IMG/VR virus record: IMGVR_UViG_3300043446_005562
Span: 1 to 64,000 of that record
DNA: 64,000 nt
Direction: 5' to 3' (one strand)
The notes under the pieces were generated by a model. The model saw nothing but the letters and a program-made list of their open reading frames with translations. It ran no database searches and was not told the DNA's origin. Shown here one piece after another: positions 1 through 27,288 of this stretch (the first letter of the stretch is position 1; each line of letters starts with the position of its first letter). The position numbers were made by a program, and so were the translations under genes.

Positions 1-201
1 CCGGTACTCTTTCCAATCGTATACGGTAAAGACCTCTCCGGTTCGGGTCTCGCAGGTCCAGTCGAAATTGACCTTGTCCTCACCCGTATTATCCGAGTAC
101 TGGGGCGCGCCCAGCATTTCAATGAGGTCGTTTACTGAACACACAAAGACGGTATCGTGAAAGGAAGTGCCGCTTGCTGATTTACTTGATAGTGTTGCCA
201 T
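1..201 (-). CDS. conserved phage hypothetical protein, 3' end cut by window edge
   Basis: Hand translation from ATG at 201: MATLSSKSASGTSFHDTVF...DKVNFDWTC...VFTVYDWKEYR. Open to position 1; early promoter at 227-259. Confidence 0.75.
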   Translation of the reverse strand, partial: MATLSSKSASGTSFHDTVFVCSVNDLIEMLGAPQYSDNTGEDKVNFDWTCETRTGEVFTVYDWKEYR

Positions 202-288
202 GGTCTGATTGTTTTAAGGTTATGGAGTAAATATAAGTATTTTATTTGACACGGAAAAATTTTTATGTCAAAAGTTATTAACAATTGG

Positions 289-582
289 CTAGGCCTTGCG
301 AACCTCAACCCTTTCGATTCGGGTTAGGCTGCCGATCGGCGACCACATGGCCTCCTCAAACGAAGAGTATTTTGACCTGTCCCAGAGCCAGACCCGGCCG
401 TCGCGTTTACAGATTTCTCGAGCAGCGCGCTCGGTCAGGCTAGCCTCGGAAAGCCGGCCTTCAAATAGAGCATGCGCATATACTGTCTTAAAGGTTGCGC
501 TTACGCAGACGGGTCTCTCTGTCTCTCCTGCTCGAGAGGTAAGGAGCCAGACCTGTCTGCTTTTTCGGGTTGGACTAGGCAT
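289..582 (-). CDS. hypothetical protein (97 aa)
   Basis: ATG start, same strand as neighbours. Confidence 0.6.
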   Translation of the reverse strand: MPSPTRKSRQVWLLTSRAGETERPVCVSATFKTVYAHALFEGRLSEASLTERAAREICKRDGRVWLWDRSKYSSFEEAMWSPIGSLTRIERVEVRKA

Positions 583-685
583 TTAACTTATCTTTTTTCT
601 GGATTTAACACGCAGTAGATGCAGAAGCCTATACAGATTAGGGATATTATCGCGCACATAGATATAATTGATTACTGGATTTATA

Positions 686-937
686 TTACCCAAGTTCTTC
701 GCTTAACCTCTTAAGGTCCGCGCATTTCTCGTACTGTTCCTTCTTCTCAAAGTGGGAGATCATGGTCCAGATAGCCTGCTTCTTCTCGTCGATTGGGGCA
801 CCGTCGTGTACAACATCCCGGAATTCTCCGGCCAAGGCTTCGTAAAGCCTGTCCATGAATCCGTCGTAGTCGGTCTCTCGAAGCCGGATAAGCTCCAGCA
901 GAATATCATGGTAGTTGCGATTCTTTTTAGTTGACAT
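686..937 (-). CDS. small protein with C-terminal UvrB/UvrC (UVR)-like motif
   Basis: FEKKEQYEKCADLKR resembles the UVR motif. Confidence 0.65.
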   Translation of the reverse strand: MSTKKNRNYHDILLELIRLRETDYDGFMDRLYEALAGEFRDVVHDGAPIDEKKQAIWTMISHFEKKEQYEKCADLKRLSEELG

Positions 938-1004
938 ATCTTTATTTATACTTTTTATTCTGATTCACCCAGCGTGAATGGTATCCTCTTTATAATATAA
1001 TACT

Positions 1005-1037
1005 AAAAAAGGGGTTTCGGATTACCAAGACCCCTTT
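1005..1037 (-). terminator. intrinsic terminator
   Basis: AAAGGGGT/ACCCCTTT stem with T-run on minus strand, after gene 1056-1382. Confidence 0.6.
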
Positions 1038-1055
1038 AATAATGGATTGCATCCG

Positions 1056-1382
1056 CTATATGAATTGGGTTAGGAATCCCGTCGGCCAGCCCGCTTCGTC
1101 CATCTCAAAGTCCATGTCGATCTGAATCATGTCCGAATAGATGCTTATTTTCTGCCACCCATCCATTAGGCGGAAGCAGTTTGAGATCAATTGATCTACC
1201 GATTCGTCGGGTACAAACTCATCGTCCAGCCTGACGGATCCATCGTCCAACGTTTGGATGTCAACGTTTAGGTACTCTCGCATTATGTCTATTGCATCTT
1301 CAGCTTTAAGCTCGGCTAGATAAGCATCGACCTGGCCGAATGCTTCGGAGATTTCAATTCTGAATAATTCTGGATTTCTCAT
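1056..1382 (-). CDS. acidic hypothetical protein (108 aa)
   Basis: ATG start, followed by terminator. Confidence 0.75.
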   Translation of the reverse strand: MRNPELFRIEISEAFGQVDAYLAELKAEDAIDIMREYLNVDIQTLDDGSVRLDDEFVPDESVDQLISNCFRLMDGWQKISIYSDMIQIDMDFEMDEAGWPTGFLTQFI

Positions 1383-1562
1383 CTTTGTCTGGATTTAGGG
1401 TTTATAAAAGAACAGAATACAGGTCAACACGACCGCGATTGCTATTATCAACAGCGCGCCATTGATGAAGGCGTCTCGCTTAAGCGCTTTAACTTCTTTT
1501 TCTGAAAATTTCTTTTGCATAGTGTATAGAGTTAATTATTATTGATTGTACTATTATTTGGA

Positions 1563-1985
1563 TTAAACGTTCTCGACAAAGGCATAGTCTGCCCATGACT
1601 TGGCCCCTGCTGCACGGTAGTTGGCTTGGCTGTATAGATTAGTATTGCTCCAATCTTGATTTATGTCGCCCACCTTCATGGTTAAGAAGAGTTCAGTATC
1701 CATAAGGATTACCTTATTACCCTTACGCGCGAACACCGTCAGCCAGGAATCCGTGCCTTCGGCCTTGAATTGAATTGTTTGCAGAGCTCCCTTCTTGAAT
1801 CCGCGAAATACATCGATCGCGCGTTTCCATTCCGGCCCGCTTTGCCAATTGGCCTGCACGCCAAGATCGTCGACAACTGTCAAGAAGCCGGCCTGCACCT
1901 TAACGATTGCTCTGAACTCTCCTTTGCTAGAGCCGATGAAATCGACCTGATTGATTCCTTCTAAATTAATGATTTGGTTTTTCAT
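1563..1985 (-). CDS. hypothetical protein (140 aa)
   Basis: ATG directly behind early promoter at 2008. Confidence 0.8.
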   Translation of the reverse strand: MKNQIINLEGINQVDFIGSSKGEFRAIVKVQAGFLTVVDDLGVQANWQSGPEWKRAIDVFRGFKKGALQTIQFKAEGTDSWLTVFARKGNKVILMDTELFLTMKVGDINQDWSNTNLYSQANYRAAGAKSWADYAFVENV

Positions 1986-2060
1986 GGTTTGATTGATTTT
2001 GGTTTAAGTAAATATAATACTTTTTCTTGACACGGAAAAATTTATTTTAAAATATTTTCT

Positions 2061-2369
2061 TTAAATCCACTGTGAACCTAGATGGCTGCAGGTCGGGGAA
2101 TACTTCTCGAGCAGGCTGGCTCCAACCTGCAGCAGAAAGCCGGATGGGGTTATGCTCCTGATCGGGCTGTCCTTATCGATTACGACCGAGCCCAGCTGAT
2201 TGCCACGGCTGTCCAGGGTCAGGACGTAGCTGCCGTCTCGAACAAGCAGAAAATCCGAACAGAATCCCTGTAGCTGGGCGCTTGACGCAATTTGAGTCCA
2301 GCCAATTTCCTGACCGGACTCGTCTAGTATTTGGAGGCTAGTACCTCGCTGTATAACATTACCTATCAT
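2061..2369 (-). CDS. hypothetical protein (102 aa)
   Basis: ATGA overlap with upstream ORF. Confidence 0.7.
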   Translation of the reverse strand: MIGNVIQRGTSLQILDESGQEIGWTQIASSAQLQGFCSDFLLVRDGSYVLTLDSRGNQLGSVVIDKDSPIRSITPSGFLLQVGASLLEKYSPTCSHLGSQWI

Positions 2370-2584
2370 GCTCTTGTTTTTGAATTTTTAATACACTCGT
2401 TAAACTCTTCTTCCGACAGGTCTGGCGTATCTTCCGTAACAAGCTTTAGTAGGGTTGCGGCTTCTATCTGTGTTACTAGGGAGTCCCTATCCACCCGGCC
2501 CGCGAATGGATCGCCTTCGGAAAATAGAATCTCAACTGCGGTCTCGGCCCAGAAGCGGGCTTCAAATTGGGTTGTCATTATCAT
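2366..2584 (-). CDS. hypothetical protein (72 aa)
   Basis: ATGA overlaps on both sides, coupled to sigma gene. Confidence 0.7.
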   Translation of the reverse strand: MIMTTQFEARFWAETAVEILFSEGDPFAGRVDRDSLVTQIEAATLLKLVTEDTPDLSEEEFNECIKNSKTRA

Positions 2585-3300
2585 ACGCCTACCTCCTTTC
2601 TCATTTTAGCGCGGGCAACCTTTAGCGCGCGATTAACTTCGACTGGGGTTTTACCAACGGCTTCCGCAACCTCCTTGGTGGAGAGCCCGTCTCCAACGAG
2701 ACCGTAGAACAGCTCCACGATTTGACGTTCGGTTGGTTTAAGAACGTTAAGTACTCTACGGAGTATTCTGGTTTGGTCCTCACTTTCGAATGGGTCTTGG
2801 AAATCTTCTCTCAACAAGAGATCGCCGACCGTATCCTCACCGTCCTCGCCGATTGGGCGGTCCAATTGGATGTTACGCATGTTGATGCTTTCGCCTGCCA
2901 TCTTGCGTTTGTAAAGATCGTATTCCTGATTTACCGGAATTCGAACGGTACGACCGATCTCGCAAAGAGCAAGGTTTAATCTCTTACGTATCCAGAACTG
3001 GGCGTAGGTAATAAACTTCACGTCTTTATCTGGGGTAAAACGACGAGCGGCTTCGATAAGACCCGCATTACCCTCTTGAATTAGGTCATCGATGGAAAGA
3101 CCCATACCGATAAACTTATTCGCAAGCGTAACAACGAATTTTAGATTTGCTTGTACTAATTGCTGTAGCGCGCGATCGTCTCCCTTTTGGATACGTGCTG
3201 CTAATTGAAGCTCCTCAGCTTTGGTGAGAGGAACTGCTACTGATGCAATATCCTTGAAGTATTGCGGTAGGCTTTCTGATGTTTCGAATCTTTTCGACAT
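2581..3300 (-). CDS. RNA polymerase sigma-70 factor, RpoD-like, lacking region 1.1
   Basis: Region 1.2 (SLPQYFKDI), region 2 (LVQANLKFVV, DDLIQEGNAGLIEAARRF, FITYAQFWIR), region 4 HTH (LKPTERQIVELFYGL...STKEVAEAVG). Confidence 0.93.
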   Translation of the reverse strand: MSKRFETSESLPQYFKDIASVAVPLTKAEELQLAARIQKGDDRALQQLVQANLKFVVTLANKFIGMGLSIDDLIQEGNAGLIEAARRFTPDKDVKFITYAQFWIRKRLNLALCEIGRTVRIPVNQEYDLYKRKMAGESINMRNIQLDRPIGEDGEDTVGDLLLREDFQDPFESEDQTRILRRVLNVLKPTERQIVELFYGLVGDGLSTKEVAEAVGKTPVEVNRALKVARAKMRKEVGV

Positions 3301-3392
3301 GGTTGATTTGGTTTAGTTGATTATTATAATGTAAATATAAACAATATTTTTGACAAGTAAAAACTTTTTGTGAATTATTTTCAAAAAAGTTA

Positions 3393-3611
3393 TTAACGTT
3401 TTTTAGACCATTCGGCAATTACTTCACAACCATAAAATCCATGGGAGCCAAAGCCAAAGGAGTCTCCGGGTTTTGGCGAACAAAGCACAACCATTTGATT
3501 CCACCTAGATTTCTTTTCTTCGCTAAAGGATTCCTTTGCTTGGTCAAGATTGTCAAATAGATTGTAAGAGTCTCCATCCTCGGAGCAAGAAATTAAAAGA
3601 TACATTTTCAT
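3393..3611 (-). CDS. hypothetical protein (72 aa)
   Basis: Own early promoter; stop codon lies inside GTTATTAAC box. Confidence 0.7.
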   Translation of the reverse strand: MKMYLLISCSEDGDSYNLFDNLDQAKESFSEEKKSRWNQMVVLCSPKPGDSFGFGSHGFYGCEVIAEWSKKR

Positions 3612-3701
3612 AGTTTATTAGTTTAATTGATTAATATAAGTAAATATAACAATAATACTTGACAGTAAAAAACTTTTTGTGAATTATTTTCAAAAAAGTT
3701 A

Positions 3702-3941
3702 TTAACATACGAACCACTGTCCGCAGTTACGGCACTCAGAAGCATCGTCGACTCTAAAAGCCCTGATTATCCATGACCACTTGTCCGAGTTAGTTGGTTC
3801 CTGTGGGTCCGCATAGACCTCTCTTGCCTCGCAGTGAGGGCAACATAGACCCTGTGGATTTGGTTCTGAACTACCGGTTCTTTCGATTATTAATCGCTTC
3901 ATTTCCGGATTTTTGATTTCTGATAGGTTTGATGTCTGCAT
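3702..3941 (-). CDS. zinc-ribbon protein
   Basis: CPHC...CRNC; own promoter; stop inside box. Confidence 0.75.
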   Translation of the reverse strand: MQTSNLSEIKNPEMKRLIIERTGSSEPNPQGLCCPHCEAREVYADPQEPTNSDKWSWIIRAFRVDDASECRNCGQWFVC

Positions 3942-4002
3942 GATTGATTTGATTGGTTAGTAAGTAAATATAACAATAATTCTTGACACGAAAAAATTTA
4001 TT

Positions 4003-4353
4003 TTACAGAAAATTATTCAATTTGATTTTACGTTTCTCCGTGTACTTCATACGGCCGAAATTCTTGAAACGAAATAGGAAGTCCATTTCACGAAGCACGT
4101 CCCTACCGTAGGTCTTTGAGAGTCTGGTCTCGATAAGTTCAAGCTTCTTATTCCATTTATGAATTGACTGATTACCTTCAAGCATTGCTTTACGTAGAAC
4201 ATCAACACTAAAGCCAGGCCTCTCGCAGTACATCTCCTCTCTCCAGTCAGAGATGTTGTCTGCCATTGCATCAATTTGGCGAGTCAATTGATATACTTCC
4301 TTTACTTGTACATTGCTTGCGTAGAGAGTTGGTATCTTTTTTCTTTTTCCCAT
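4003..4353 (-). CDS. basic hypothetical protein (116 aa)
   Basis: Own early promoter at 4377. Confidence 0.75.
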   Translation of the reverse strand: MGKRKKIPTLYASNVQVKEVYQLTRQIDAMADNISDWREEMYCERPGFSVDVLRKAMLEGNQSIHKWNKKLELIETRLSKTYGRDVLREMDFLFRFKNFGRMKYTEKRKIKLNNFL

Positions 4354-4445
4354 AGTTTTAGTTTTTTTAGGTTTAAGTAAACATAAACAATTACTTTGAC
4401 ACGGAAAAATTTTTGTGAATTATTTTTCAAAAATTATTAACAGCG

Positions 4446-4469
4446 AAAAGGGGTCCTACCACGGACCCC
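4446..4469 (-). terminator. intrinsic terminator
   Basis: GGGGTCC/GGACCCC 7-bp stem plus T-run on minus strand. Confidence 0.7.
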
Positions 4470-4503
4470 AGTTCTATCAATCAACCAAGTAATATTTTAT
4501 TTT

Positions 4504-4785
4504 CTAATTTAGATGGATACCTGTCTCTCGCAACAGGTTCTCTAACTCTATCTCTGAGTCTGACATGCCCTGTTGACGCTTGACCTGCTTCATGCAGAAC
4601 TGCATTAACAGTTGAGTAAGCTCATGTGTGCTGCGCTCGTCCTGGGTTGCGGACAGGAGGGTTATTAATCCATTTCCGATTAGGATGAGCTCGGGGTCAG
4701 AGGTCTTTAATCCGCCCGCGATTAGGCTGTTGGCTAGGGTTTCGAGCTCGGCTCGGGTTTTCTCTCTTATCTCTTTTCTGTTCAT
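4504..4785 (-). CDS. hypothetical protein (93 aa)
   Basis: ATG, helical composition. Confidence 0.75.
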   Translation of the reverse strand: MNRKEIREKTRAELETLANSLIAGGLKTSDPELILIGNGLITLLSATQDERSTHELTQLLMQFCMKQVKRQQGMSDSEIELENLLRETGIHLN

Positions 4786-4814
4786 GATCGATTGGTTATT
4801 GGTTAGGATTTATA

Positions 4815-5009
4815 TTACTCTTTTCCGATCGTGATGGTCTTGTTCATTGCATAGATTCTTTCCCAGAACTCGTTGTAACCAAGCTCCTGCTCTGGATTAA
4901 CCGTGCTCTGGGCTCTCGCGCCGCCGCCATAGGTTAAGTCAATGGGTTCTCCGATTGATGGATCGAAACCTTGTAGTCTGTCGATTAGGGATTTAAAGAT
5001 TTTCTTCAT
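4815..5009 (-). CDS. hypothetical protein (64 aa)
   Basis: ATG with A-rich leader. Confidence 0.65.
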   Translation of the reverse strand: MKKIFKSLIDRLQGFDPSIGEPIDLTYGGGARAQSTVNPEQELGYNEFWERIYAMNKTITIGKE

Positions 5010-5103
5010 GGTCTATTTGGATTTAATTGGTTACTTGATTAGATGCCAGCCGGGCCCTGTGCTTGGGCCTGGTCCTGGACTTGATGGGCTGTTTGGGTCT
5101 GCT

Positions 5104-5316
5104 TCATTTGGCTTTAGGAATTAAACGAATTAGCGATTGAGTTAATAGACCCGGATCTTCGTCGTACCGGCCGCGAGACCAGCCGTCTACCAGACTCTTT
5201 AGGTCTTTGGAATTCTTGGTTGAGATGCCGGATTCCTCGGCGGACTTGATCGTCTCGGCCGGAATATCCATCCACGTTTTCATTTCTCGGAGCATTGATG
5301 CTAGGGTTGTTGTCAT
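5104..5316 (-). CDS. hypothetical protein (70 aa)
   Basis: Own early promoter at 5339. Confidence 0.7.
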   Translation of the reverse strand: MTTTLASMLREMKTWMDIPAETIKSAEESGISTKNSKDLKSLVDGWSRGRYDEDPGLLTQSLIRLIPKAK

Positions 5317-5369
5317 AGTTTTTGGTTTGATTGATTAGTTAAATATAAGCATTTTAATTGACACGGGAA

Positions 5370-5933
5370 AATAAAGTTATTAACAGTTACTAGGGAGTCC
5401 GGCTAGACCCTTCGCCGCCAAGAACTGGATGCGCTCGATCCGGGCCTGCAATTCCGGCAGGTCCTGTGCCATGCTGTGCAGTATCTTTAGATCGCGTTTG
5501 CTCATGCTTGGCGCGGCCATGGCCAGCGCAACGTCAACTGGATTACCAAGCCGCATGGCCTCGAGAACAGGAGCAGAGCCGGCTGGGGAGATTGATCCTG
5601 GAATCTGGCAGTTTGCGCCGAATTCAAAGCGCCAAAAGCCGGGTCTGTTCCAGCTGTCGATGAGGTTGGCGTCCAGCATCTGACGTACTCGGCTTATGTG
5701 CTTGCTTGTCGTACGGCTGTACTTGCCATTTGTCACGAGCCGCGGTCTGCGGCCGAGCTCCTTTGCAAAGAACTCTACTGTTGCAACATGGGTTTCGTAG
5801 CTTATAACCCTGTCCCCGACTAGGAACAGGTTCTGCGCGATCTTTAGGGTTGGTTTGAGTTTCATGGTTTAAATATAATATTTTTTGTTGAGACCTGACA
5901 ATAAAGTTATTAACAGTTACTAGGGAGTCCGGC
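5370..5933. repeat. perfect 34-bp direct repeat (5370-5403, 5900-5933) flanking one gene-plus-promoter cassette
   Basis: AATAAAGTTATTAACAGTTACTAGGGAGTCCGGC read at both positions. Confidence 0.95.
5380..5865 (-). CDS. hypothetical protein (161 aa)
   Basis: ISYETHVA...YSRTTSKHI motif common in phage early proteins; C-terminus encoded by the direct repeat. Confidence 0.75.
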   Translation of the reverse strand: MKLKPTLKIAQNLFLVGDRVISYETHVATVEFFAKELGRRPRLVTNGKYSRTTSKHISRVRQMLDANLIDSWNRPGFWRFEFGANCQIPGSISPAGSAPVLEAMRLGNPVDVALAMAAPSMSKRDLKILHSMAQDLPELQARIERIQFLAAKGLAGLPSNC

Positions 5934-5938
5934 CGAAT

Positions 5939-6460
5939 CTATACAGATTCAACCGGTGCGAATACTTCATTGACATTAAAATCTCCTGAACGGCTGCTGT
6001 TGAGCATGCGCTCCAGGCAGACAGGCCCGAGAGCGGTGTGGATCGATTCCGGATGGGTAAGCGGTAATCCGCAAGCGCAGCATCTGCCCTCGTGGAATAG
6101 ACCTACACGACCGCGTAGAATCTCTGGATTCTTGATCGCTGACACGACCCAGCCTAGGGCGCGAGCTAAGCGTGAATCCGGTCTGACATTGCGGCCGAGC
6201 TTGACGTGCATTGTCTCGGCAAAGAGAGTGCCGGCGAACTGCGAGCTTTGTCGGCCGTCGTTAAGCAGGGAAATATCAACGTAATAGATCGGCAGCTTGA
6301 TCTTGCGATCCTGCTTGTCGCGCAGCTGCTTGATCTTCACGGTCATGTGGGTGCCTGCCGCAAGGTTACGGAACGTAAGCACCGCACGGCCGGCTAACGC
6401 GAGCTTGGGTAGGGCAAGCGGGTTAAGGTTCGGGCGGGGAATGTTTCTGTGGTTTCTCAT
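5939..6460 (-). CDS. DUF6011-like zinc-binding protein (173 aa)
   Basis: HEGRCCACGLPLTHPESIHTALGPVC; start moved to ATG at 6460 behind promoter 6484. Confidence 0.7.
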   Translation of the reverse strand: MRNHRNIPRPNLNPLALPKLALAGRAVLTFRNLAAGTHMTVKIKQLRDKQDRKIKLPIYYVDISLLNDGRQSSQFAGTLFAETMHVKLGRNVRPDSRLARALGWVVSAIKNPEILRGRVGLFHEGRCCACGLPLTHPESIHTALGPVCLERMLNSSRSGDFNVNEVFAPVESV

Positions 6461-6666
6461 GGTAGATTGGTTTAATTGATTAAGTAAATATAACCAATTA
6501 CTTTCAAATAAAAAAATTTTTTGTGAATTATTTTTCAAAAGTTATTAACAAAGTTATGGACACTGGCGGACTGAAGTGCAGGTCGGAGTATACCCTCTGC
6601 GATCCGGTTGGGGATCGAACCTTAAAAACCGGGCGCTGGGCCCGGTCCTATGGATTATCCGGCTCG

Positions 6667-6810
6667 TTAGAACTCGAAGGCTGAGGTTGAGGAGTAGTTG
6701 CCGGTTACAAGGTTCGCGATTGCGAACAGGATTCCTGATACTGCGATTGCTGCGACGCATACGGTCCAGACTTGCATTACGCGTAGGGCGATGATTTGTG
6801 GTTTGCTCAT
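6667..6810 (-). CDS. small membrane protein (47 aa, not in ORF track)
   Basis: MSKPQIIALRVMQVWTVCVAAIAVSGILFAIANLVTGNYSSTSAFEF; own promoter at 6840. Confidence 0.65.
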   Translation of the reverse strand: MSKPQIIALRVMQVWTVCVAAIAVSGILFAIANLVTGNYSSTSAFEF

Positions 6811-6883
6811 GGTAGATTTGATTGATTGGTTAAACATAGGTAAATATAATAATTATCTTTGAGACCTGAAAACTTTTTGTGAA

Positions 6884-7054
6884 TTATTTTCCAAAAGTTA
6901 TTAACATTTTTGCGGACATGCTGAAGAGCGCGGCGAAGGTAAATGCCAGAATCGGCAAGGTTTCTAGAGGTTGGGGAGTTACGACTAGGGCGATAAGACC
7001 CGCAGCGCTCGCAAAGAACACTGTTGCTAGGGCAAGGATTTCTAGTTTTTTCAT
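6884..7054 (-). CDS. small two-helix membrane protein (56 aa, not in ORF track)
   Basis: MKKLEILALATVFFASAAGLIALVVTPQPLETLPILAFTFAALFSMSAKMLITFGK; own promoter at 7078. Confidence 0.65.
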   Translation of the reverse strand: MKKLEILALATVFFASAAGLIALVVTPQPLETLPILAFTFAALFSMSAKMLITFGK

Positions 7055-7138
7055 GGTGTATAAATTAATTGGTTAAAGCTAATATAACCAAAAAACCCCA
7101 GACTAAAAAATCTGGGGTCATTTATTTTTCAAAAGTTA

Positions 7139-7429
7139 TTAACATTTCTGGCCGCAGTCCCGGCAACGCCAAAGCGTGAGACCGCTTTCGTGACGAACGG
7201 CCGCGTACTGATTCTTGTGCTGACACTCCGCTTCCTGCTCCGCATAGAGCTTTAAGCAGGCCGGACAGCCGATCGTCTCGAGACCGGAGAGCCTGGCCCA
7301 GTTGTTGCTTAGAGCTGGCGTGCCGCACAGGATTCCGTGTCCGCTTTTGTAGATGTGGGCTGTGTTACTCCACACGTTGCCCTTGTTGCCGAAGATGGAG
7401 AAGTTGGGTTTAAGGTCTTTTACTTGCAT
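7139..7429 (-). CDS. Cys/His-rich zinc-finger protein
   Basis: H..CG, CPAC, C.H, CRDC; own promoter; stop inside box. Confidence 0.75.
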   Translation of the reverse strand: MQVKDLKPNFSIFGNKGNVWSNTAHIYKSGHGILCGTPALSNNWARLSGLETIGCPACLKLYAEQEAECQHKNQYAAVRHESGLTLWRCRDCGQKC

Positions 7430-7511
7430 ATCGATCTTTTAATTGGTTAAGTAAATATAACAAAAAAACCCCAAACAAAAAAATCTGGGGTCATTTTCTT
7501 TTAAACTTTTT

Positions 7512-7598
7512 CTAGAGGCAATGCATAAGCAAGCCGTAAAGGCCAATGCCTGCCAAAAAGTAGATCAGGTTATTCAACCACTTTGGATATCTGTCCAT
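7512..7598 (-). CDS. possible 28-aa membrane peptide
   Basis: MDRYPKWLNNLIYFLAGIGLYGLLMHCL after an A-rich leader. Confidence 0.4.
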   Translation of the reverse strand: MDRYPKWLNNLIYFLAGIGLYGLLMHCL

Positions 7599-7626
7599 GC
7601 TTCTCGTGTTAGGTGTTAATAATGTC

Positions 7627-7917
7627 TTATTCAAAGAGACCTTCGGTCAGCTGCATGAAGTAATCGAAATAGAAGCCGTAGCCCGCCGCTCTTAGAGCCT
7701 TGCTTATCTGATGGGCAATGTGGCCTCTTGGCTCAGTATCGAATATCTCGCCGTGCTTCAAGGAGATCTTCTTCATGCCCTGCTTAATGAGATCCTGAAC
7801 CTCAACCCCTGTCACGCGACGTTGGCTCATTATCTTTTTGGTTATCTTGTCTACTAGACTTTGGCAGGCTCTTTCTCCTGCGTCTGAAAACATCTCGTAA
7901 TAGGGTTTCTTTTCCAT
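7627..7917 (-). CDS. hypothetical protein (96 aa)
   Basis: ATG; TATAAT-like element upstream. Confidence 0.75.
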   Translation of the reverse strand: MEKKPYYEMFSDAGERACQSLVDKITKKIMSQRRVTGVEVQDLIKQGMKKISLKHGEIFDTEPRGHIAHQISKALRAAGYGFYFDYFMQLTEGLFE

Positions 7918-7957
7918 GGTCTAATGTGGTTTGGTTAATATTATATTACCATAGGGG

Positions 7958-8119
7958 CTAGGCCTCGGGTCCGATGAGGTCCCAGGCAGTTTCGCCGGTC
8001 GGCTGGCCCCTGAAGGTAATTTCGTAGTTGGGGTCCTGGCCGCTCTCGACGATATCGGCTAAGAGGGCCGGTAGGGTTGGGAATTCCTTTTGGTAGTAGG
8101 CGCAGTCTAATGAATACAT
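7958..8119 (-). CDS. hypothetical protein (53 aa, not in ORF track)
   Basis: MYSLDCAYYQKEFPTLPALLADIVESGQDPNYEITFRGQPTGETAWDLIGPEA; promoter at 8145. Confidence 0.7.
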   Translation of the reverse strand: MYSLDCAYYQKEFPTLPALLADIVESGQDPNYEITFRGQPTGETAWDLIGPEA

Positions 8120-8196
8120 ATAAAAAGATTTAATTGGTTAGGATACAAATATAACCAAAATACTTGACACGGAAAAATTTATTTTAACCAATTTCT

Positions 8197-8819: not shown

Positions 8820-9059
8820 TTAGCCGATCAAGCTCATGTTCGTCTTGCGACCGCGTGTCATGTCGAAAGCCTTGTTTACGATACGATCGTTGCGGTATAA
8901 TCCGTTAAGTACTTCGCTCACGAAGTTAGGGGAGAAGCCCGTGCTCTCCGCAACTCGGGCTACATCGCCCATGCGTTTGCGAGAATTGATTACTGCGATC
9001 TTTGCCGTGATTGGCAACTTGCGATAGGTCATACCTATTTTGCTTTGATTCTTTGTCAT
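8820..9059 (-). CDS. Cro/XRE-like helix-turn-helix DNA-binding protein
   Basis: VARVAESTGFSPNFVSEVLNG. Confidence 0.7.
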   Translation of the reverse strand: MTKNQSKIGMTYRKLPITAKIAVINSRKRMGDVARVAESTGFSPNFVSEVLNGLYRNDRIVNKAFDMTRGRKTNMSLIG

Positions 9060-9383: not shown

Positions 9384-9671
9384 TCAGTTATTTTCCGGTA
9401 GGCTCCATTCGGACAAGAGCTCCTTCTGCCTGACCAGGCTCTCTGCCCATTCAAACTCTTCTCGAGCAACAGCCTCTTCTATGGCGGGGTCCAGCACCCG
9501 ATAGAAGCTTTGTAATAGGTACTCCTTGTATTCCGTTCCCCATTCTTCCCGACCGGCCAGCTGGATAAGATGCTGTTTAAATTCCCAGATTACCCGGTCT
9601 ATCCGAGCCCAGTCCCGGCCTGCCCGCTCGAGAGCAACGATAACCTTGTCTAACATTAAGTCTGCCTGCAT
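9384..9671 (-). CDS. small protein with UVR-like motif
   Basis: IEEAVAREEFEWAESLVRQ. Confidence 0.65.
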   Translation of the reverse strand: MQADLMLDKVIVALERAGRDWARIDRVIWEFKQHLIQLAGREEWGTEYKEYLLQSFYRVLDPAIEEAVAREEFEWAESLVRQKELLSEWSLPENN

Positions 9672-9748
9672 TTTCAGATTTATTTGGATTACAGAATACT
9701 ATACTCTACCGGTCAGATAGGTTTCAAGCAGCGGACCGGGCAGACTGC

Positions 9749-10012
9749 CAATAGACAACTAATAGACAACCCAAACAACCTCCCGCTCTCGAGCAGGCAG
9801 ACCAGACCTGTTACCTGGCAGGTCTATTGGATTACCCGATACGGCTGGCCAGGCTACTGCCAGGTACTGCCCCAGGGGTCAGCCCGGTAGGGTCCAGGTA
9901 CTGCCCCGGGTACAGCCCCAGGGTCACTCCAGGAGGCTGCCCAGGATGACTCCAGGAGCTATACCCAGGTGCCCCGGGGTCACCAAATAGTGACTCCTGG
10001 AGGTGCCCCGGG
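9749..10012. repeat. GC-rich degenerate ~11-12-bp tandem repeat tract at the strand switch
   Basis: CC(A/G/T)GG or CCGG cores at 9849, 9860, 9872, 9884, 9894, 9906, 9918, 9929, 9941, 9952, 9965, 9974, 9996, 10008; AATAGACAAC twice near 9749-9769. Confidence 0.8.
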
Positions 10013-10260
10013 TGCACTTTATGCTGCTATAAAAAAGTATACCGGGAGCAGAAACCATGACTTTTTCCTTTTTTTCCAAAATCCCCTAGCCTCGGGACCC
10101 ATCCCCGGACCAATGCGGCCGGTTCCACGGAGTGCCTGTGTGCGTTTCGAAAAGTCACCGGCCTCGGATTCAAGAATTTCTCCCCGGGCTGGAGAGGCCG
10201 CTGGAACCTTTTCCGGTTTTGCTGTATAATAGACTATATTAATTAAAAACACTACAGCTT

Positions 10261-10470
10261 ATGGAACTTACACCAGTAAAATCCTCTACTGTCGCCAAGG
10301 TAGGATACAATCCAGAAAAATCGGAATTGCTCGTTGAATTCTCTTCGGGCGCCCAATACAGGTATCTCGCCGTTGAGCAAGGGGTCTATGAATCCCTGCT
10401 CTCAGCAGAGTCCGTTGGTAAATTCCTTAACGCTAATATTAAAGAGCAGTATGAGTTCCAAAAGATCTAA
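10261..10470 (+). CDS. KTSC domain protein
   Basis: VKSSTVAKVGYNPEKSELLVEFSSGAQYRY...LLSAESVGKFLNANIK. Confidence 0.9.
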   Translation: MELTPVKSSTVAKVGYNPEKSELLVEFSSGAQYRYLAVEQGVYESLLSAESVGKFLNANIKEQYEFQKI

Positions 10471-10940: not shown

Positions 10941-11162
10941 ATGAAAATCCAGAAAAATACCAAGGCTCCAACCGAGGCCCAGCTCATTGAGCTTGCAAAA
11001 CGCATGCTAGAGCTCTCCACCAAATTTCCCAACAACTACGACCTTGGCGAAAGGGTTCGCAGCCTTCACGAGCTTGCGGTTTCCAACCCCGATCTGCTGA
11101 TAAATAACCAGAAAGACCGCGACACAGATGAGTCGAATAAAACCATTCTTGGCCCACATTAA
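10941..11162 (+). CDS. hypothetical protein (73 aa)
   Basis: FPNNYDLGERVR motif seen in small phage proteins. Confidence 0.65.
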   Translation: MKIQKNTKAPTEAQLIELAKRMLELSTKFPNNYDLGERVRSLHELAVSNPDLLINNQKDRDTDESNKTILGPH

Positions 11163-11763
11163 CGAGAACGATAAGTTCAACCGCCTTAAACAACTGGGCC
11201 TCTCCCAAAACGACACCCCGCAGGAAACTTTCAGCCAGCTATCCGAGGTATTTCAAAATGATCCGCAGCTGAGCTCACTCTTCCAGCAGATCGATGCCCG
11301 CGTTGAAGAGCTCTTTGCTCCAATTCTGGCAAGAGCGGACGAGGAGTCGGATGAATGGCAGGAAATCATGGACGACATGGGCTGGAGCTGGGCCGAGGAT
11401 GCTGGGAACTACTGGATCTGGAACGCGATCTCTGGCTTTGGAGAAGGTGGCGGCATGTACGAATCAGAGGAACACCCAGAGCGTGAGCGCAATGTTGAAA
11501 GATTAAGAGGGCTAGGCCTTGCACCCAAAAAGGAATTCGATGAGCGTTGGGAAGAGATGATGGATGAATGGGGCTCGGATCCCGATATTGATAGGGCAAT
11601 CACAACGCTCAAGGCCAAGACCAACGAGATCATCGACAAGCACATTGACCTAGACGATTATGAGGACGAAGGTGAATGGAATGAGCGTGTTGATTGGATG
11701 TATCAAGCTAGCATTGACGATCTCGGCTTTTTTGAGTACATGGTTGCATCAGGCTCGCTATAA
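11128..11763 (+). CDS. acidic putative virion internal protein
   Basis: N-terminal MSRIKPFLAHINE leader; RLKQLGL and RLRGLGL motifs. Confidence 0.75.
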   Translation: MSRIKPFLAHINENDKFNRLKQLGLSQNDTPQETFSQLSEVFQNDPQLSSLFQQIDARVEELFAPILARADEESDEWQEIMDDMGWSWAEDAGNYWIWNAISGFGEGGGMYESEEHPERERNVERLRGLGLAPKKEFDERWEEMMDEWGSDPDIDRAITTLKAKTNEIIDKHIDLDDYEDEGEWNERVDWMYQASIDDLGFFEYMVASGSL

Positions 11764-11795: not shown

Positions 11796-12581
11796 ATGAA
11801 ACACACAATCATTAAAGATTTTAAAGGCTGGAACCGCCTGTTTGAAGCTGAAACAGCCGGTACGGCTGGCTCAGCCGGGGTTGCCGGTACAACCGGTACA
11901 GCTGGTACTTCCGGTACTGCCGGTACCGCAGCCGCTGCTCCGCTAACCGCAATCACAGGTGCGGACGGAGCCCTAACCGCTGACGATATTAAAAAGGTGC
12001 AGGCTGTTGTCTACAATGCACCTCTCACCGACACCAAATCATGTGACGGTAAAGTTGGGCCAAACACCATTGCTAAAATCAAGGAGTTTAGAACCGCTAA
12101 CTCAATCACAGACGAAACGCTTGAGCCAACTCAAACCACAATCGGGCCAAAAACCCTTGCCAAAATTGCCGAAAAGATCGCGGCAGGCTTTACGCCCGGC
12201 GCAGCTGCAGGTTCAGCCGGCACTGCAGGTACCGCAGGCACTGTGTTTGATCAACGTAATCAAAACGACGACAAAATTGCAATGGGCATCTGCGATCAGA
12301 TCGTTGCAAAATTCAAGGAAACCGAGTTTTGGAAACCATTTAAGGGTACCTTTAACGATGATGAGTCTGCGGCCGGTATGGCCTACAACAACTGGTACAC
12401 GACCACGATCGTACCGTTGGTTAAGACGCTTAGAGCGGGCGACCCCAACATTGCAAAGCTGGAGGCGGCTGACAAATCGACCCGTGCAAAACTACAGGGC
12501 GGAACCGCAAACGATACTTCATCTTGGAGCATTGATACGCTAAACGGGCCGATGCAGTACACGGTCAACACCGACTTCTAA
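11796..12581 (+). CDS. putative virion protein with AGTAG low-complexity linkers and a peptidoglycan-binding-like segment
   Basis: MKHTIIKDFKGWNRLFE leader; CDGKVGPNT...IGPKTL. Confidence 0.75.
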   Translation: MKHTIIKDFKGWNRLFEAETAGTAGSAGVAGTTGTAGTSGTAGTAAAAPLTAITGADGALTADDIKKVQAVVYNAPLTDTKSCDGKVGPNTIAKIKEFRTANSITDETLEPTQTTIGPKTLAKIAEKIAAGFTPGAAAGSAGTAGTAGTVFDQRNQNDDKIAMGICDQIVAKFKETEFWKPFKGTFNDDESAAGMAYNNWYTTTIVPLVKTLRAGDPNIAKLEAADKSTRAKLQGGTANDTSSWSIDTLNGPMQYTVNTDF

Positions 12582-26372: not shown

Positions 26373-26373
26373 T

Positions 26374-27288
26374 ATGAAATATTTAATAGAATATCGGCTA
26401 TTCGAATCAGCTGAGGCAATTCTTAAAGCCACTGCCGGTTTTGGCACTGATGAAGAGGCCCTAGTCAAAGCAATCATTGAAATTCAATCGGCTGACGAGC
26501 TTGCAAAAATTGACGCTGAACTTGCTGCAAACGGTTCGGCTGAATACAAAAGCGTGAAGGCGGCAGTTGATGGAGAGCTTGGAATATTCGATAGAGTTTA
26601 CAAGCAAATGATCTCTAAAAAATTTGAAGAGCTTGGACTAACTAGCTATTTGAAAGACGGAATAATTCCGGCGCAGGTTAAAAAATCTCAAGCTGAACCG
26701 GTTAAGAGCCAGTCGACCACCTCTGGTGAAACTAAAAAGCTTTCACAAGGTAAAGTTTCAATCAATTCAAATAAGAGTGCTCCCCTAATCGTTGTATTTG
26801 GAGGAATTGATGTTGGTGGTCGAACCAGCGGAGACTACATGTACGATTATTTCAAAGAGGATACTCTTGGCAAAACCACAACATTTGTTGCAAATTCTTC
26901 AAGGATAGATGGAGTTAAGGCATGGGACGAGATTTCTCAATTGGGTCTCTCGCCATCTAAAAAGATTCTTTACCTGTTCTCAGGTGGATATTTACCAGGT
27001 ATGAGTCTTTTGGCCAAGGTGCCCGCTGAGAATTGGGATAAAATTTATCTAGTTGATATCTGGATCGGTAACAATCAAAATACGCAAAAGATCTATACTG
27101 AACTTGCCGAAGCTCATCCCGATAAAGTCAAATACTATTACACAGGTGGAGAGAATGGAGCCGGCGGCTCAAATAATTTAACAGCTAAAAAAGAGATAAT
27201 TGCTGCAGTAAAAGATTCAAAGGCTGCAAGCTCTCACATGGGTGCAAATGATATTGCGGTAACTGATCTTAAATCTGATATTGCCTAA
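26374..27288 (+). CDS. annexin-like repeat fused to alpha/beta-hydrolase-like domain
   Basis: AILKATAGFGTDEEALVKAII...DGELG; LIVVFGG, YLFSGG, LVD, H; start moved to ATG 26374. Confidence 0.7.
   Translation: MKYLIEYRLFESAEAILKATAGFGTDEEALVKAIIEIQSADELAKIDAELAANGSAEYKSVKAAVDGELGIFDRVYKQMISKKFEELGLTSYLKDGIIPAQVKKSQAEPVKSQSTTSGETKKLSQGKVSINSNKSAPLIVVFGGIDVGGRTSGDYMYDYFKEDTLGKTTTFVANSSRIDGVKAWDEISQLGLSPSKKILYLFSGGYLPGMSLLAKVPAENWDKIYLVDIWIGNNQNTQKIYTELAEAHPDKVKYYYTGGENGAGGSNNLTAKKEIIAAVKDSKAASSHMGANDIAVTDLKSDIA

What the first reader, a model, noticed from the sequence alone, without database searches (positions are those of the whole stretch)
9749..10012. Helically phased GC-rich repeat tract at the divergence point
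Seen: about 14 CC(A/G/T)GG-type cores spaced mostly 10-13 bp apart, 10 of them CCWGG between 9849 and 10000, in a ~570-bp non-coding gap where genes switch from minus to plus. It is flanked by an AGACCTG/CAGGTCT hairpin on one side and an A/T-rich stretch on the other. Inference: iteron-like replication origin, packaging or terminus signal, or a methylation-sensitive switch, since CCWGG is the Dcm-type site.
Basis: partly seen in the sequence, partly recalled or inferred. Interest (0 to 1): 0.6.

Follow-up and report, generated by a model that had tools for sequence, protein, structure and literature searches.

The report
Conserved iteron-like array in jumbo phage
A unique, evolutionarily conserved row of about 14 evenly spaced CCNGG sites lies between two divergent gene clusters of an uncultivated ~250-kb freshwater phage. 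It is most likely a docking platform for a DNA-binding protein and a candidate replication origin, not a packaging signal or a Dcm methylation switch.

Summary
The window is the first 64 kb of a 252.6-kb jumbo myophage contig. At 9849-10012, fourteen CCNGG cores follow one another with a period of 11.35 bp (residual SD 0.9 bp). This is 17 CCNGG hits per 200 bp against at most 4 anywhere else in the genome.

The array sits in a 589-bp non-coding gap between a leftward and a rightward gene cluster. Ten distinct relatives keep the same array: 8-17 cores, period 11.15-11.45 bp, span about 165 bp in most. This holds even where the adjacent protein is only 38-48% identical. In close relatives the gap is more conserved (88-91%) than the flanking genes (75-86%).

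CC and GG are conserved, but the centre base drifts. The motif is therefore CCNGG, not the Dcm site CCWGG, and the phage record holds no DNA methyltransferase match.

No structured RNA is predicted, and no contig from three RNA libraries covers the tract. In seven unrelated phages, 11-bp CCNGG arrays lie in the inter-domain linker of lambda-O-like initiator genes, the classic origin layout.

Best reading: an iteron-type nucleoprotein assembly site and probable replication origin. An operator array for the divergent promoters is the close rival. The binding protein is not identified and function is untested.

The parts
9384..9671 (-). 95-aa gene, the first gene of the leftward cluster. It is the conserved neighbour of the array in every relative found, although relatives were found through this gene. 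The product is an acidic four-helix protein with LExAGRD and EEYEWA motifs.
   Evidence: ORF. Homologues. Alignment A5. AlphaFold model with pLDDT 85, four helices. No informative fold match.
9698..9727 (-). Sigma-70-like leftward promoter, TTGAAA-N18-TATAGT.
   Evidence: Consensus scan, 10 of 12 matches. Invariant in the close relatives.
9750..9770 (+). Two tandem copies of AATAGACAAC(T). Relatives keep a GACAAC...AACAAC version.
9804..9825 (.). Inverted repeat AGACCTG-N8-CAGGTCT with a CCTGG in its loop. The right arm CAGGTCTA is invariant. The left arm is replaced in L012 by a direct copy.
9849..10012 (.). The array: 14 CCNGG cores, period 11.35 bp. Units alternate roughly between CCNGG-GTCACT and CCNGG-AGGCTG types, so that CTCCNGGAG and CCCNGGG palindromes recur. 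The last two units are inverted.
   Evidence: Conserved in 10 relatives.
9979..9994 (.). A/T-containing interruption of the array (one unit skipped), with the dyad GTCAC-N6-GTGAC. The dyad is not kept in relatives; the A/T patch is.
10023..10037 (+). Box GCTGCTATAAAAAAG, invariant in the close relatives and present in L021 and L024. It reads as an extended -10 (TGcTATAAA) and/or serves as the A/T-rich element beside the array.
   Evidence: Unique in the genome.
10041..10045 (.). One further CCNGG core 34 bp (three periods) after the last array core, beyond the A/T box. Its centre base is G, A or T in different relatives.
10046..10224 (.). Highly conserved non-coding DNA (about 90% identity). 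Indels of 3 and 5 nt exclude a conserved reading frame. No supported RNA structure.
10225..10230 (+). Perfect TATAAT -10 hexamer about 30 nt before the first rightward gene. The -35 is weak (TGGAAC).
   Evidence: Read. Invariant. An RNA-library contig covers 10203-10527.
10261..10470 (+). KTSC-domain gene (69 aa), the first gene of the rightward cluster. Genes further right are mosaic between relatives.
   Evidence: Pfam PF13619, E = 4e-20. Mosaicism.

Best explanation
The tract is a cis-acting iteron array: about 14 copies of a short palindromic-core site (CCNGG, often extended to CTCCNGGAG or CCCNGGG) laid out every 11.35 bp over about 165 bp.

Proposed mechanism. A sequence-specific, probably dimeric, DNA-binding protein binds cooperatively along the array and builds one large nucleoprotein complex. 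Because the period is 11.35 bp and not 10.5 bp, the bound DNA must be either untwisted by about 1.3 turns over the array or wound into a shallow superhelix. Either would load torsional stress onto the adjacent A/T box (10023-10037).

Most likely role. I take this complex to mark a replication origin of the jumbo phage. It sits at the point where its two early-looking gene clusters diverge, so origin firing and promoter activity may be coupled.

Shown: the array, its uniqueness, its conservation and fixed geometry, its non-coding and apparently untranscribed state, and the use of similar arrays inside initiator genes of other phages.

Inferred: protein binding, the identity of the function, and the untwisting mechanism. 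The binding protein is not identified.
For: 1. Regular array far beyond chance and unique in 252.6 kb.
2. The same array is present in 10 distinct relatives: 8-17 cores, period 11.15-11.45 bp, R 0.82-0.95, span about 165 bp in most. It persists when the neighbouring protein falls to 38-48% identity.
3. In close relatives the gap is 88-91% identical while flanking genes are 75-86%. One relative differs by an 11-nt, one-unit indel.
4. CC/GG positions are invariant in 85% of columns against 50% for the centre base. This is the pattern expected of a CCNGG-reading protein.
5. The sequence is not coding: the period is not a multiple of 3, and indels are of 11, 5 and 3 nt. It is not a structured RNA: z-scores are +1.3 and +0.5, and the covariation term is unfavourable.
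6. Three metatranscriptome assemblies have contigs on the genes either side but none between 9637 and 10202, while a DNA run covers it.
7. Among 66 viral contigs with five CCNGG cores at 11-bp spacing, 19 arrays lie deep inside long ORFs. Seven of those ORFs match PHROG 'replication initiation protein / O-like' families, with the array in the inter-domain linker. From my own knowledge, that is the lambda O/ori layout.
8. The phage encodes its own DnaB-like helicase and DNA polymerase, so it needs a loading site.
9. In T4, active origins lie at points of transcriptional divergence, and one (oriE) carries evenly spaced 12-nt repeats (PMC3016281).
Against: 1. No initiator was found. Six-frame searches with two O-like PHROG families gave no match at E <= 1.
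2. The neighbouring small proteins have no family assignment. The conserved 95-aa neighbour is an acidic helical bundle with no DNA-binding look.
3. The 'A/T-rich' element is short and only modestly richer in A+T than this 59% A+T genome.
4. There is no E. coli-type DnaA box in the gap.
5. GC skew does not turn at the tract.
6. The replication genes lie about 135 kb away.
7. In IMG/VR, exact-spacing CCNGG arrays are as common at 8, 10 and 14 bp as at 11 bp. The motif-plus-spacing pair is therefore not a diagnostic signature of origins.
8. The array abuts promoters on both sides, which fits an operator role equally well.
Confidence: 0.42

Rival explanations
1. Operator or enhancer array. A phage (or host) regulator coats the array and switches the two divergent promoters, and the TGcTATAAA box promoter inside the gap, on or off. 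This would resemble ribbon-helix-helix repressors that polymerise on tandem sites. It has no direct role in replication.
For: The array lies between a sigma-70-like leftward promoter (9698-9727) and a rightward TATAAT (10225-10230). Its last two units cover the -35 region of the TGcTATAAA box, and one more in-phase core follows the box. In relative L021 the array starts only about 25-30 nt from the start codon of the leftward gene, so it must overlap that promoter. No RNA-library contig lies over the gap, as expected of an untranscribed control region.
Against: Fourteen sites over 165 bp with a fixed span is much more than typical operators need. No regulator gene is identifiable: the only HTH-like neighbour (8820-9059, PHROG E = 0.006) is not conserved in the distant relative L022. 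The unit motif occurs nowhere else in the genome, so it is not a general regulator's site. In L021 the right-hand neighbour is a gene pointing towards the array, so the element is kept independently of the rightward operon.
Confidence: 0.3
2. Packaging initiation (pac) site or genome terminus. The small terminase oligomer wraps the phased sites and directs the first cut, as in P1 or SPP1.
For: Phased repeated sites are what a ring-shaped small terminase would wrap (my own knowledge). Many short metagenomic contigs end in or beside the tract.
Against: The large terminase gene is at 65184-67130, about 55 kb away. Pac sites normally lie in or next to the terminase genes (my own knowledge). Neither this contig nor the 253-kb relative ends at the tract, and their ends do not coincide. 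Contig breaks at a repeat are ordinary assembly behaviour. The terminase is of the T4-like headful kind by family. No raw reads were available, so termini were not mapped.
Confidence: 0.05
3. Centromere-like partition site of a plasmid-like (pseudolysogenic) state, analogous to R1 parC (11-bp iterons around a promoter) or tubC.
For: The 11-bp unit, the number of units, and the iterons on both sides of a promoter-like box resemble R1 parC (my own knowledge).
Against: No ParA-type ATPase, ParB or tubulin was found in the record. The ParM search was silent, but its control was silent too. None of the genes within 5 kb looks like an NTPase. The record is only 93% complete.
Confidence: 0.05
4. Methylation-sensitive switch based on Dcm-type CCWGG sites.
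For: Ten of the 14 cores are CCWGG. CCWGG is mildly under-represented in the rest of the genome, O/E 0.57-0.80.
Against: Four cores are CCSGG. At orthologous positions relatives read CCAGG, CCCGG, CCGGG or CCTGG, so W is not selected. There is no C5 or N4/N6 methyltransferase in the phage record. The host is unknown.
Confidence: 0.03
5. No specific function: a tolerated, decaying tandem repeat or a curvature element.
For: Exact CCNGG tandem arrays of any unit length are common in viral contigs.
Against: Period, span and cores are kept across relatives whose neighbouring proteins are only 38-48% identical. The tract is more conserved than the flanking genes.
Confidence: 0.05

Closest known systems
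Lambda-type origin (ori iterons bound by the O initiator) and iteron plasmid origins such as R6K gamma
   Same: A tandem row of short sites with internal dyad symmetry, a total length of about 150-170 bp, and an A/T-rich element directly beside it. Seven other phage contigs carry 11-bp CCNGG arrays exactly where lambda carries ori, in the linker of an O-like initiator gene.
   Different: Here the array is intergenic, not inside a gene. No O-like or other recognisable initiator is encoded. Units are 11.35 bp apart rather than about two turns, though a 23-bp super-period is visible. The A/T element is weak.
Phage T4 oriE 'iterons'
   Same: Evenly spaced 11-12-nt repeats in a large myophage that, like this one, uses TATAAATA-type late promoters. 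In T4, active origins sit at points of transcriptional divergence, and the role of the repeats is equally unproven (PMC3016281).
   Different: The T4 repeats lie inside gene 5, with a 24-nt (8-codon) period, so they may simply reflect a repetitive protein. The present array is non-coding, GC-rich and palindromic-cored. No sequence similarity.
R1 parC / ParR type II centromere-operator
   Same: 11-bp iterons on both sides of a promoter-like box, about 10-15 units, cooperative coating expected.
   Different: No ParM/ParR or any partition NTPase was found. The arrangement is asymmetric (12 + 2 + 1 units), and the genome is that of a lytic-looking jumbo phage.
P1 pac site (methylation-controlled repeated hexamers)
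   Same: Clustered short palindromic sites that could be methylated.
   Different: Not near the terminase genes. The centre base is not conserved. No methylase was found. Termini are untested.

Membership tests
Iteron-type replication origin (lambda ori / plasmid Rep-iteron origins) | Tandem, regularly spaced direct repeats that serve as initiator binding sites | tested here: met
   14 cores, period 11.35 bp, residual SD 0.9 bp, unique in the genome, conserved in 10 relatives. Binding itself is not tested.
Iteron-type replication origin (lambda ori / plasmid Rep-iteron origins) | Adjacent A+T-rich DNA unwinding element | tested here: inconclusive
   An invariant GCTGCTATAAAAAAG box and a T-rich run follow the array. 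They are short and only modestly richer in A+T than a 59% A+T genome.
Iteron-type replication origin (lambda ori / plasmid Rep-iteron origins) | Cognate initiator gene encoded around or beside the iterons | tested here: not met
   No match to phrog_16167 or phrog_1408 at E <= 1 in six frames. Neighbours have no Pfam or PHROG initiator hit. The 95-aa neighbour is a generic helical bundle. An unrecognised initiator cannot be excluded.
Iteron-type replication origin (lambda ori / plasmid Rep-iteron origins) | Replication starts there | not testable with these tools
   Only assembled contigs of public runs were available. There is no time course of infection.
Iteron-type replication origin (lambda ori / plasmid Rep-iteron origins) | Host DnaA boxes (present in many but not all such origins) | tested here: not met
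   No TTATCCACA with up to 1 mismatch in 9672-10260. The host and its box consensus are unknown.
T4 oriE iteron cluster | 12-nt repeats within gene 5 next to repEA/repEB | tested here: not met
   The T4 repeats have a 24-nt period inside the gene 5 coding sequence. The present array is intergenic and unrelated in sequence. RepEA/RepEB homologues were not searched.
Type II partition centromere (R1 parC-like) | Adjacent genes for an actin-like ATPase and a ribbon-helix-helix adaptor | tested here: not met
   StbA_N search gave nothing, but its control was silent too. No AAA_31, tubulin or ParB_N either. Neighbours lack NTPase motifs.
pac site / physical terminus | Location in or beside the terminase genes, with read starts or contig ends piling up there | tested here: not met
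   TerL is 55 kb away. The long contigs G000 and G002 do not end at the tract. Read-start analysis was not possible.
Dcm-type (CCWGG) methylation switch | The sites are CCWGG and W is maintained | tested here: not met
   4 of 14 cores are CCSGG. The centre base is invariant in only 50% of cores against 85% for CC/GG. Centre bases differ in every relative.
Dcm-type (CCWGG) methylation switch | A cognate cytosine methyltransferase acts on the phage DNA | tested here: inconclusive
   No PF00145 or PF01555 match in the phage record. A host enzyme cannot be assessed because the host is unknown.

The most novel reading that the evidence does not exclude
The array, its A/T box and the about 200 bp of conserved DNA beside it form the origin of a lineage of huge freshwater phages. 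This origin is fired by an initiator of a so far unrecognised family. The initiator could be one of the small orphan proteins always found next to it, such as the 95-aa four-helix protein with the LExAGRD/EEYEWA motifs. The complex would work by holding about 165 bp of DNA at 11.35 bp per turn, which forces the neighbouring box open.
Probability: 0.15. Interest if true: 0.6.

Novelty: new member of a known kind. Interest (0 to 1): 0.4.

Why it matters
Replication origins and early control regions of jumbo and huge phages are almost unmapped, and most such phages are known only from metagenomes. This tract is a compact, conserved cis element of about 600 bp with fixed geometry. It could be cloned and used as bait to fish out its binding protein, or tested for infection-dependent replication. 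That would give a first experimental handle on how this lineage starts replication or early transcription. It is not a surprise in kind, because iteron arrays are textbook elements. The value lies in a well-delimited candidate and in showing that the Dcm and packaging readings do not hold.

Tried and rejected
1. Structured RNA in the conserved 10012-10260 stretch. Rfam gave no hit at gathering thresholds. Single-sequence folds are no better than shuffles on either strand. The alignment fold has an unfavourable covariation term and one compensatory pair. An apparent CGGG/CCCG to CUGG/CCAG compensation seen by eye did not hold up.

2. Small ORFs over the tract (for example 9832-10017, 9969-10229). 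Rejected because of 11-, 5- and 3-nt indels between relatives.

3. Function of the 95-aa neighbour. Pfam and PHROGs gave nothing. The Atlas gave only hypothetical viral clusters. AlphaFold gave a four-helix bundle. Foldseek against the PDB gave only designed helical proteins, E > 0.8.

4. The 79-aa HTH-like protein as binder. The PHROG hit is weak (E = 0.006). There is no PDB relative. It is not conserved in L022.

5. DNA similarity to known phages and plasmids. None, apart from a collagen-like repeat.

6. CCNGG at 11 bp as a special class in IMG/VR. Rejected: 66 loci at 11 bp against 70, 78 and 83 at 8, 10 and 14 bp.

7. Relationship of the 222-kb contig L035, which has a larger CCNGG array followed by an AT-rich stretch. 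Its flanking proteins are unrelated and TerL is only 24% identical.

8. A second array-like region in the other large divergent gap (69803-70334). None found.

9. GC skew. It follows gene orientation and shows no turn at the tract.

10. Read-based terminus mapping. Not possible, because all runs were held as contigs.

11. Literature searches for this motif arrangement found nothing specific.

Full report
**What the genome is.** The window is bases 1-64000 of a single 252,618-bp contig with 41% G+C. IMG/VR classes the record as a linear virus record, about 93% complete. It encodes:
- a T4-type large terminase (65184-67130), a baseplate wedge protein and topoisomerase II;
- tail sheath, major head protein, prohead protease, GroEL, ribonucleotide reductase, a DNA polymerase, a DnaB-like helicase and an SbcC-like protein.

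Its terminase is only 31-38% identical to those of uncultured huge phages, Sphingomonas phage PAU and Lak phages. The T4 late-promoter word TATAAATA stands 7-33 nt before at least nine gene starts. It is therefore an uncultivated jumbo myophage. Public runs that hold it are freshwater, river, reservoir and estuary metagenomes.

**The observation.**
- Fourteen CCNGG cores start at 9849, 9860, 9872, 9883, 9894, 9905, 9918, 9929, 9941, 9952, 9965, 9973, 9996 and 10007.
- Ten are CCWGG and four are CCCGG/CCGGG.
- A linear fit gives a period of 11.35 bp with a residual SD of 0.9 bp. Phase coherence is 0.87 at 11.3-11.4 bp and 0.27 at 10.5 bp.
- Random placement never reproduced the regularity in 200,000 trials.
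- Dinucleotide shuffles of the tract give 3.5 +/- 1.7 CCNGG hits against 17 observed.
- No other 200-bp window of the genome has more than 4, and no other chain of more than two phased cores exists.
- Autocorrelation peaks at 11-12, 23 and 34 bp. Units alternate loosely between a CCNGG-GTCACT and a CCNGG-AGGCTG type, so that the palindromes CTCCNGGAG and CCCNGGG recur.
- The last two units are inverted relative to the rest, after a one-unit gap that holds an A/T patch (9979-9994).

The tract lies in a 589-bp gap (9672-10260). To the left is a minus-strand 95-aa gene preceded by a good sigma-70-like promoter, TTGAAA-N18-TATAGT at 9727..9698. To the right is a plus-strand KTSC-domain gene preceded by a perfect TATAAT at 10225-10230. 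The hairpin-like AGACCTG/CAGGTCT (9804-9825) and the A/T box GCTGCTATAAAAAAG (10023-10037) flank the array as reported.

**Conservation.** A neighbouring 594-aa protein led to two IMG/VR contigs, one of 253,137 bp. They carry the same array at the syntenic place.

The 95-aa protein led to further metagenomic contigs in two tiers. Close relatives have the protein 71-97% identical. Distant ones are about 38-48% identical in the alignment, or 39-51% by phmmer.

All ten distinct sequences have the array: 8-17 cores, best period 11.15-11.45 bp, coherence 0.82-0.95, span about 165 bp in most. L021 and L024 follow it with the same TATAAAAAAG box, and one more in-phase core lies 34-35 bp further on in the relatives whose sequence reaches that far.

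Against the close relatives:
- the array and the right half of the gap are 87-91% identical to the window;
- the flanking genes are 74-86% identical;
- the 594-aa protein is only 64% identical;
- gene content further right is mosaic.

One relative differs by an exact one-unit (11-nt) indel. Within the array, CC and GG columns are invariant in 85% of cases, spacers in 79% and the centre base in 50%. In the distant relatives the spacers diverge but the cores and their spacing stay. Selection therefore acts on CCNGG cores at a fixed pitch and over a fixed length.

One caveat applies. Relatives were found through genes next to the tract, so the linkage to the 95-aa gene is partly by ascertainment.

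**What it is not.**
- Not coding. The period is not a multiple of three, and relatives differ by 11-, 5- and 3-nt indels.
- Not a detectable structured RNA. Rfam is silent, folds are no more stable than shuffles on either strand, and the alignment fold has an unfavourable covariation term.
- Probably not transcribed at any level. In three river metatranscriptome assemblies, contigs lie on the genes to the left (up to 9636) and right (from 10203), but none lies between. A DNA run covers 9423-9762 and 9880-10046 without differences. These are contigs, so a hole is weak evidence and strand and ends cannot be read.
- Not a Dcm switch in any simple sense. The conserved word is CCNGG, four cores are not Dcm sites, and the record has no C5 or N4/N6 methyltransferase.
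- Not evidently a pac site or terminus. The terminase gene is 55 kb away. The two long contigs end elsewhere, and the ends of this contig map 24.5 kb apart inside the relative. The many short contigs that break at the tract are what assemblers do at repeats.
- Not evidently a centromere. No ParA-like, ParB or tubulin gene was found. The ParM search and its control were both silent.

**What it most likely is.** A unique, non-coding, apparently untranscribed row of palindromic-cored sites, with conserved pitch and total length, is the signature of a platform on which many copies of one DNA-binding protein assemble.

The pitch matters. At 11.35 bp the sites are not on one face of relaxed B-DNA, because they drift by about 29 degrees per unit. 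A continuous protein coat would therefore either untwist the DNA by about 1.3 turns over the array or wind it into a shallow superhelix. Both would stress the adjoining A/T box. This step is inference.

Two functions fit such a platform: a replication origin, and an operator array for the flanking promoters.

The following points favour the origin reading.
- The phage has its own helicase and polymerase and must load them somewhere.
- In T4, active origins lie at transcriptional divergence points, and one has evenly spaced 12-nt repeats (PMC3016281).
- I scanned IMG/VR for five CCNGG cores at 11-bp spacing (66 loci). Nineteen arrays lay deep inside long ORFs, and 16 of those ORFs were scanned against PHROGs.
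- Seven (L040, L054, L073, L052, L078, L086, L091) match 'replication initiation protein' or 'O-like' families. In each the array sits in the linker after the N-terminal domain. By my own knowledge of phage lambda, that is exactly where lambdoid phages keep ori.
- Such arrays do therefore serve as origin iterons in other phages, by architectural inference.

The following points weigh against the origin reading.
- No initiator is recognisable in this phage.
- The neighbours are orphans. The conserved 95-aa neighbour folds as an acidic four-helix bundle without a DNA-binding look.
- The A/T element is weak, and there are no DnaA boxes.
- GC skew tracks gene orientation only.
- The T4 parallel is loose, because the T4 repeats sit inside gene 5 with a 24-nt period.
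- CCNGG arrays are no commoner at 11 bp than at 8, 10 or 14 bp in viral contigs.

The operator reading is helped by the promoters on both sides. The last units cover the -35 region of a TGcTATAAA extended -10-like box. In L021 the array reaches to within about 25-30 nt of the leftward start codon.

The two roles are not exclusive. I put the origin reading, with or without a regulatory side, at about 0.4 and a purely regulatory array at about 0.3. Packaging, partition, methylation switch and no function each get 0.05 or less.

**Comparison and novelty.** In kind this is a known thing: an iteron-type array. It is not a member of the lambda O/ori family, nor of the parC, P1 pac or Dcm-switch types, because a defining feature failed in each case (see the membership table). 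It is a new, well-delimited example in a lineage of huge phages with no cultured member. It has an unusually regular geometry, and its binding protein is unknown.

Noticed in passing
window 209-8186 (copies at about 209, 1990, 3313, 3622, 3946, 4359, 5314, 5869, 6481, 6837, 7075, 7433, 8127): At least 12 copies of a 60-80-nt intergenic element lie between the small leftward genes. Its + strand boxes are GTAAATATAA, TTGACACGGAAAAA and GTGAATTATTTTTCAAAAGTTATTAAC. It looks like a repeated promoter/terminator cassette of an early gene cluster, possibly read by the phage sigma factor at 2581-3300.
   Followed up: partly
whole genome, e.g. window 11764 and 21875; genome 163277, 195194, 236799: The T4 late-promoter word TATAAATA stands 7-33 nt upstream of at least nine gene starts. 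These include the collagen-like gene at 11796 and the prohead protease. This suggests T4-style late transcription.
   Followed up: partly
window 10941-11763 versus L012 8282-9307: Right of the conserved gap the gene content is mosaic. The window's 73-aa and 211-aa genes are replaced in the close relative by an unrelated 341-aa gene. The nearby 594-aa protein is only 64% identical although TerL is 94% identical.
   Followed up: partly
genome ends (window 1-1000; genome 251619-252618): The two ends of this contig map 24.5 kb apart in the 253-kb relative, at 154138-155136 and 179687-180668. This record therefore lacks a stretch that the relative has, and its ends are not physical termini shared with the relative.
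   Followed up: partly
L035 3873-4360 (IMGVR_UViG_3300012007_000007, 222 kb, 61% G+C): An unrelated jumbo contig has a roughly 300-bp array of about 30 CCNGG units in a divergent gap. It is followed by a strikingly A/T-rich stretch that shares the 12-mer TTACAGAATACT with window 9689-9700. The flanking proteins are unrelated. This may be a convergent origin-like region or a coincidence.
   Followed up: partly
window 11796-12581: A 261-aa protein with collagen-like G-T-A/S-G repeats. Its repeat DNA gives the only (weak) hits to Lactobacillales plasmids. It is preceded by TATAAATA, so it is probably a late structural (fibre-like) gene, together with the 594-aa gene after it.
   Followed up: no
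L015 1-60 (ena:ERZ27299106 contig end): The contig end next to the tract carries Illumina adapter sequence. This is an assembly artefact in the public record.
   Followed up: no
window 26373-27284: The largest gap without an ORF in the genome: 912 bp between convergent genes. There is no Rfam hit and no tRNA.
   Followed up: no
L040, L054, L056, L073, L034, L049: In other phage contigs the CCNGG array stands directly beside a second, different short tandem repeat, for example CCTGATT x5, CCTCAGCAAAGT x3, TCGGTAG x3 or CCCGA x5. These are compound iteron regions, several of them inside O-like initiator genes.
   Followed up: partly
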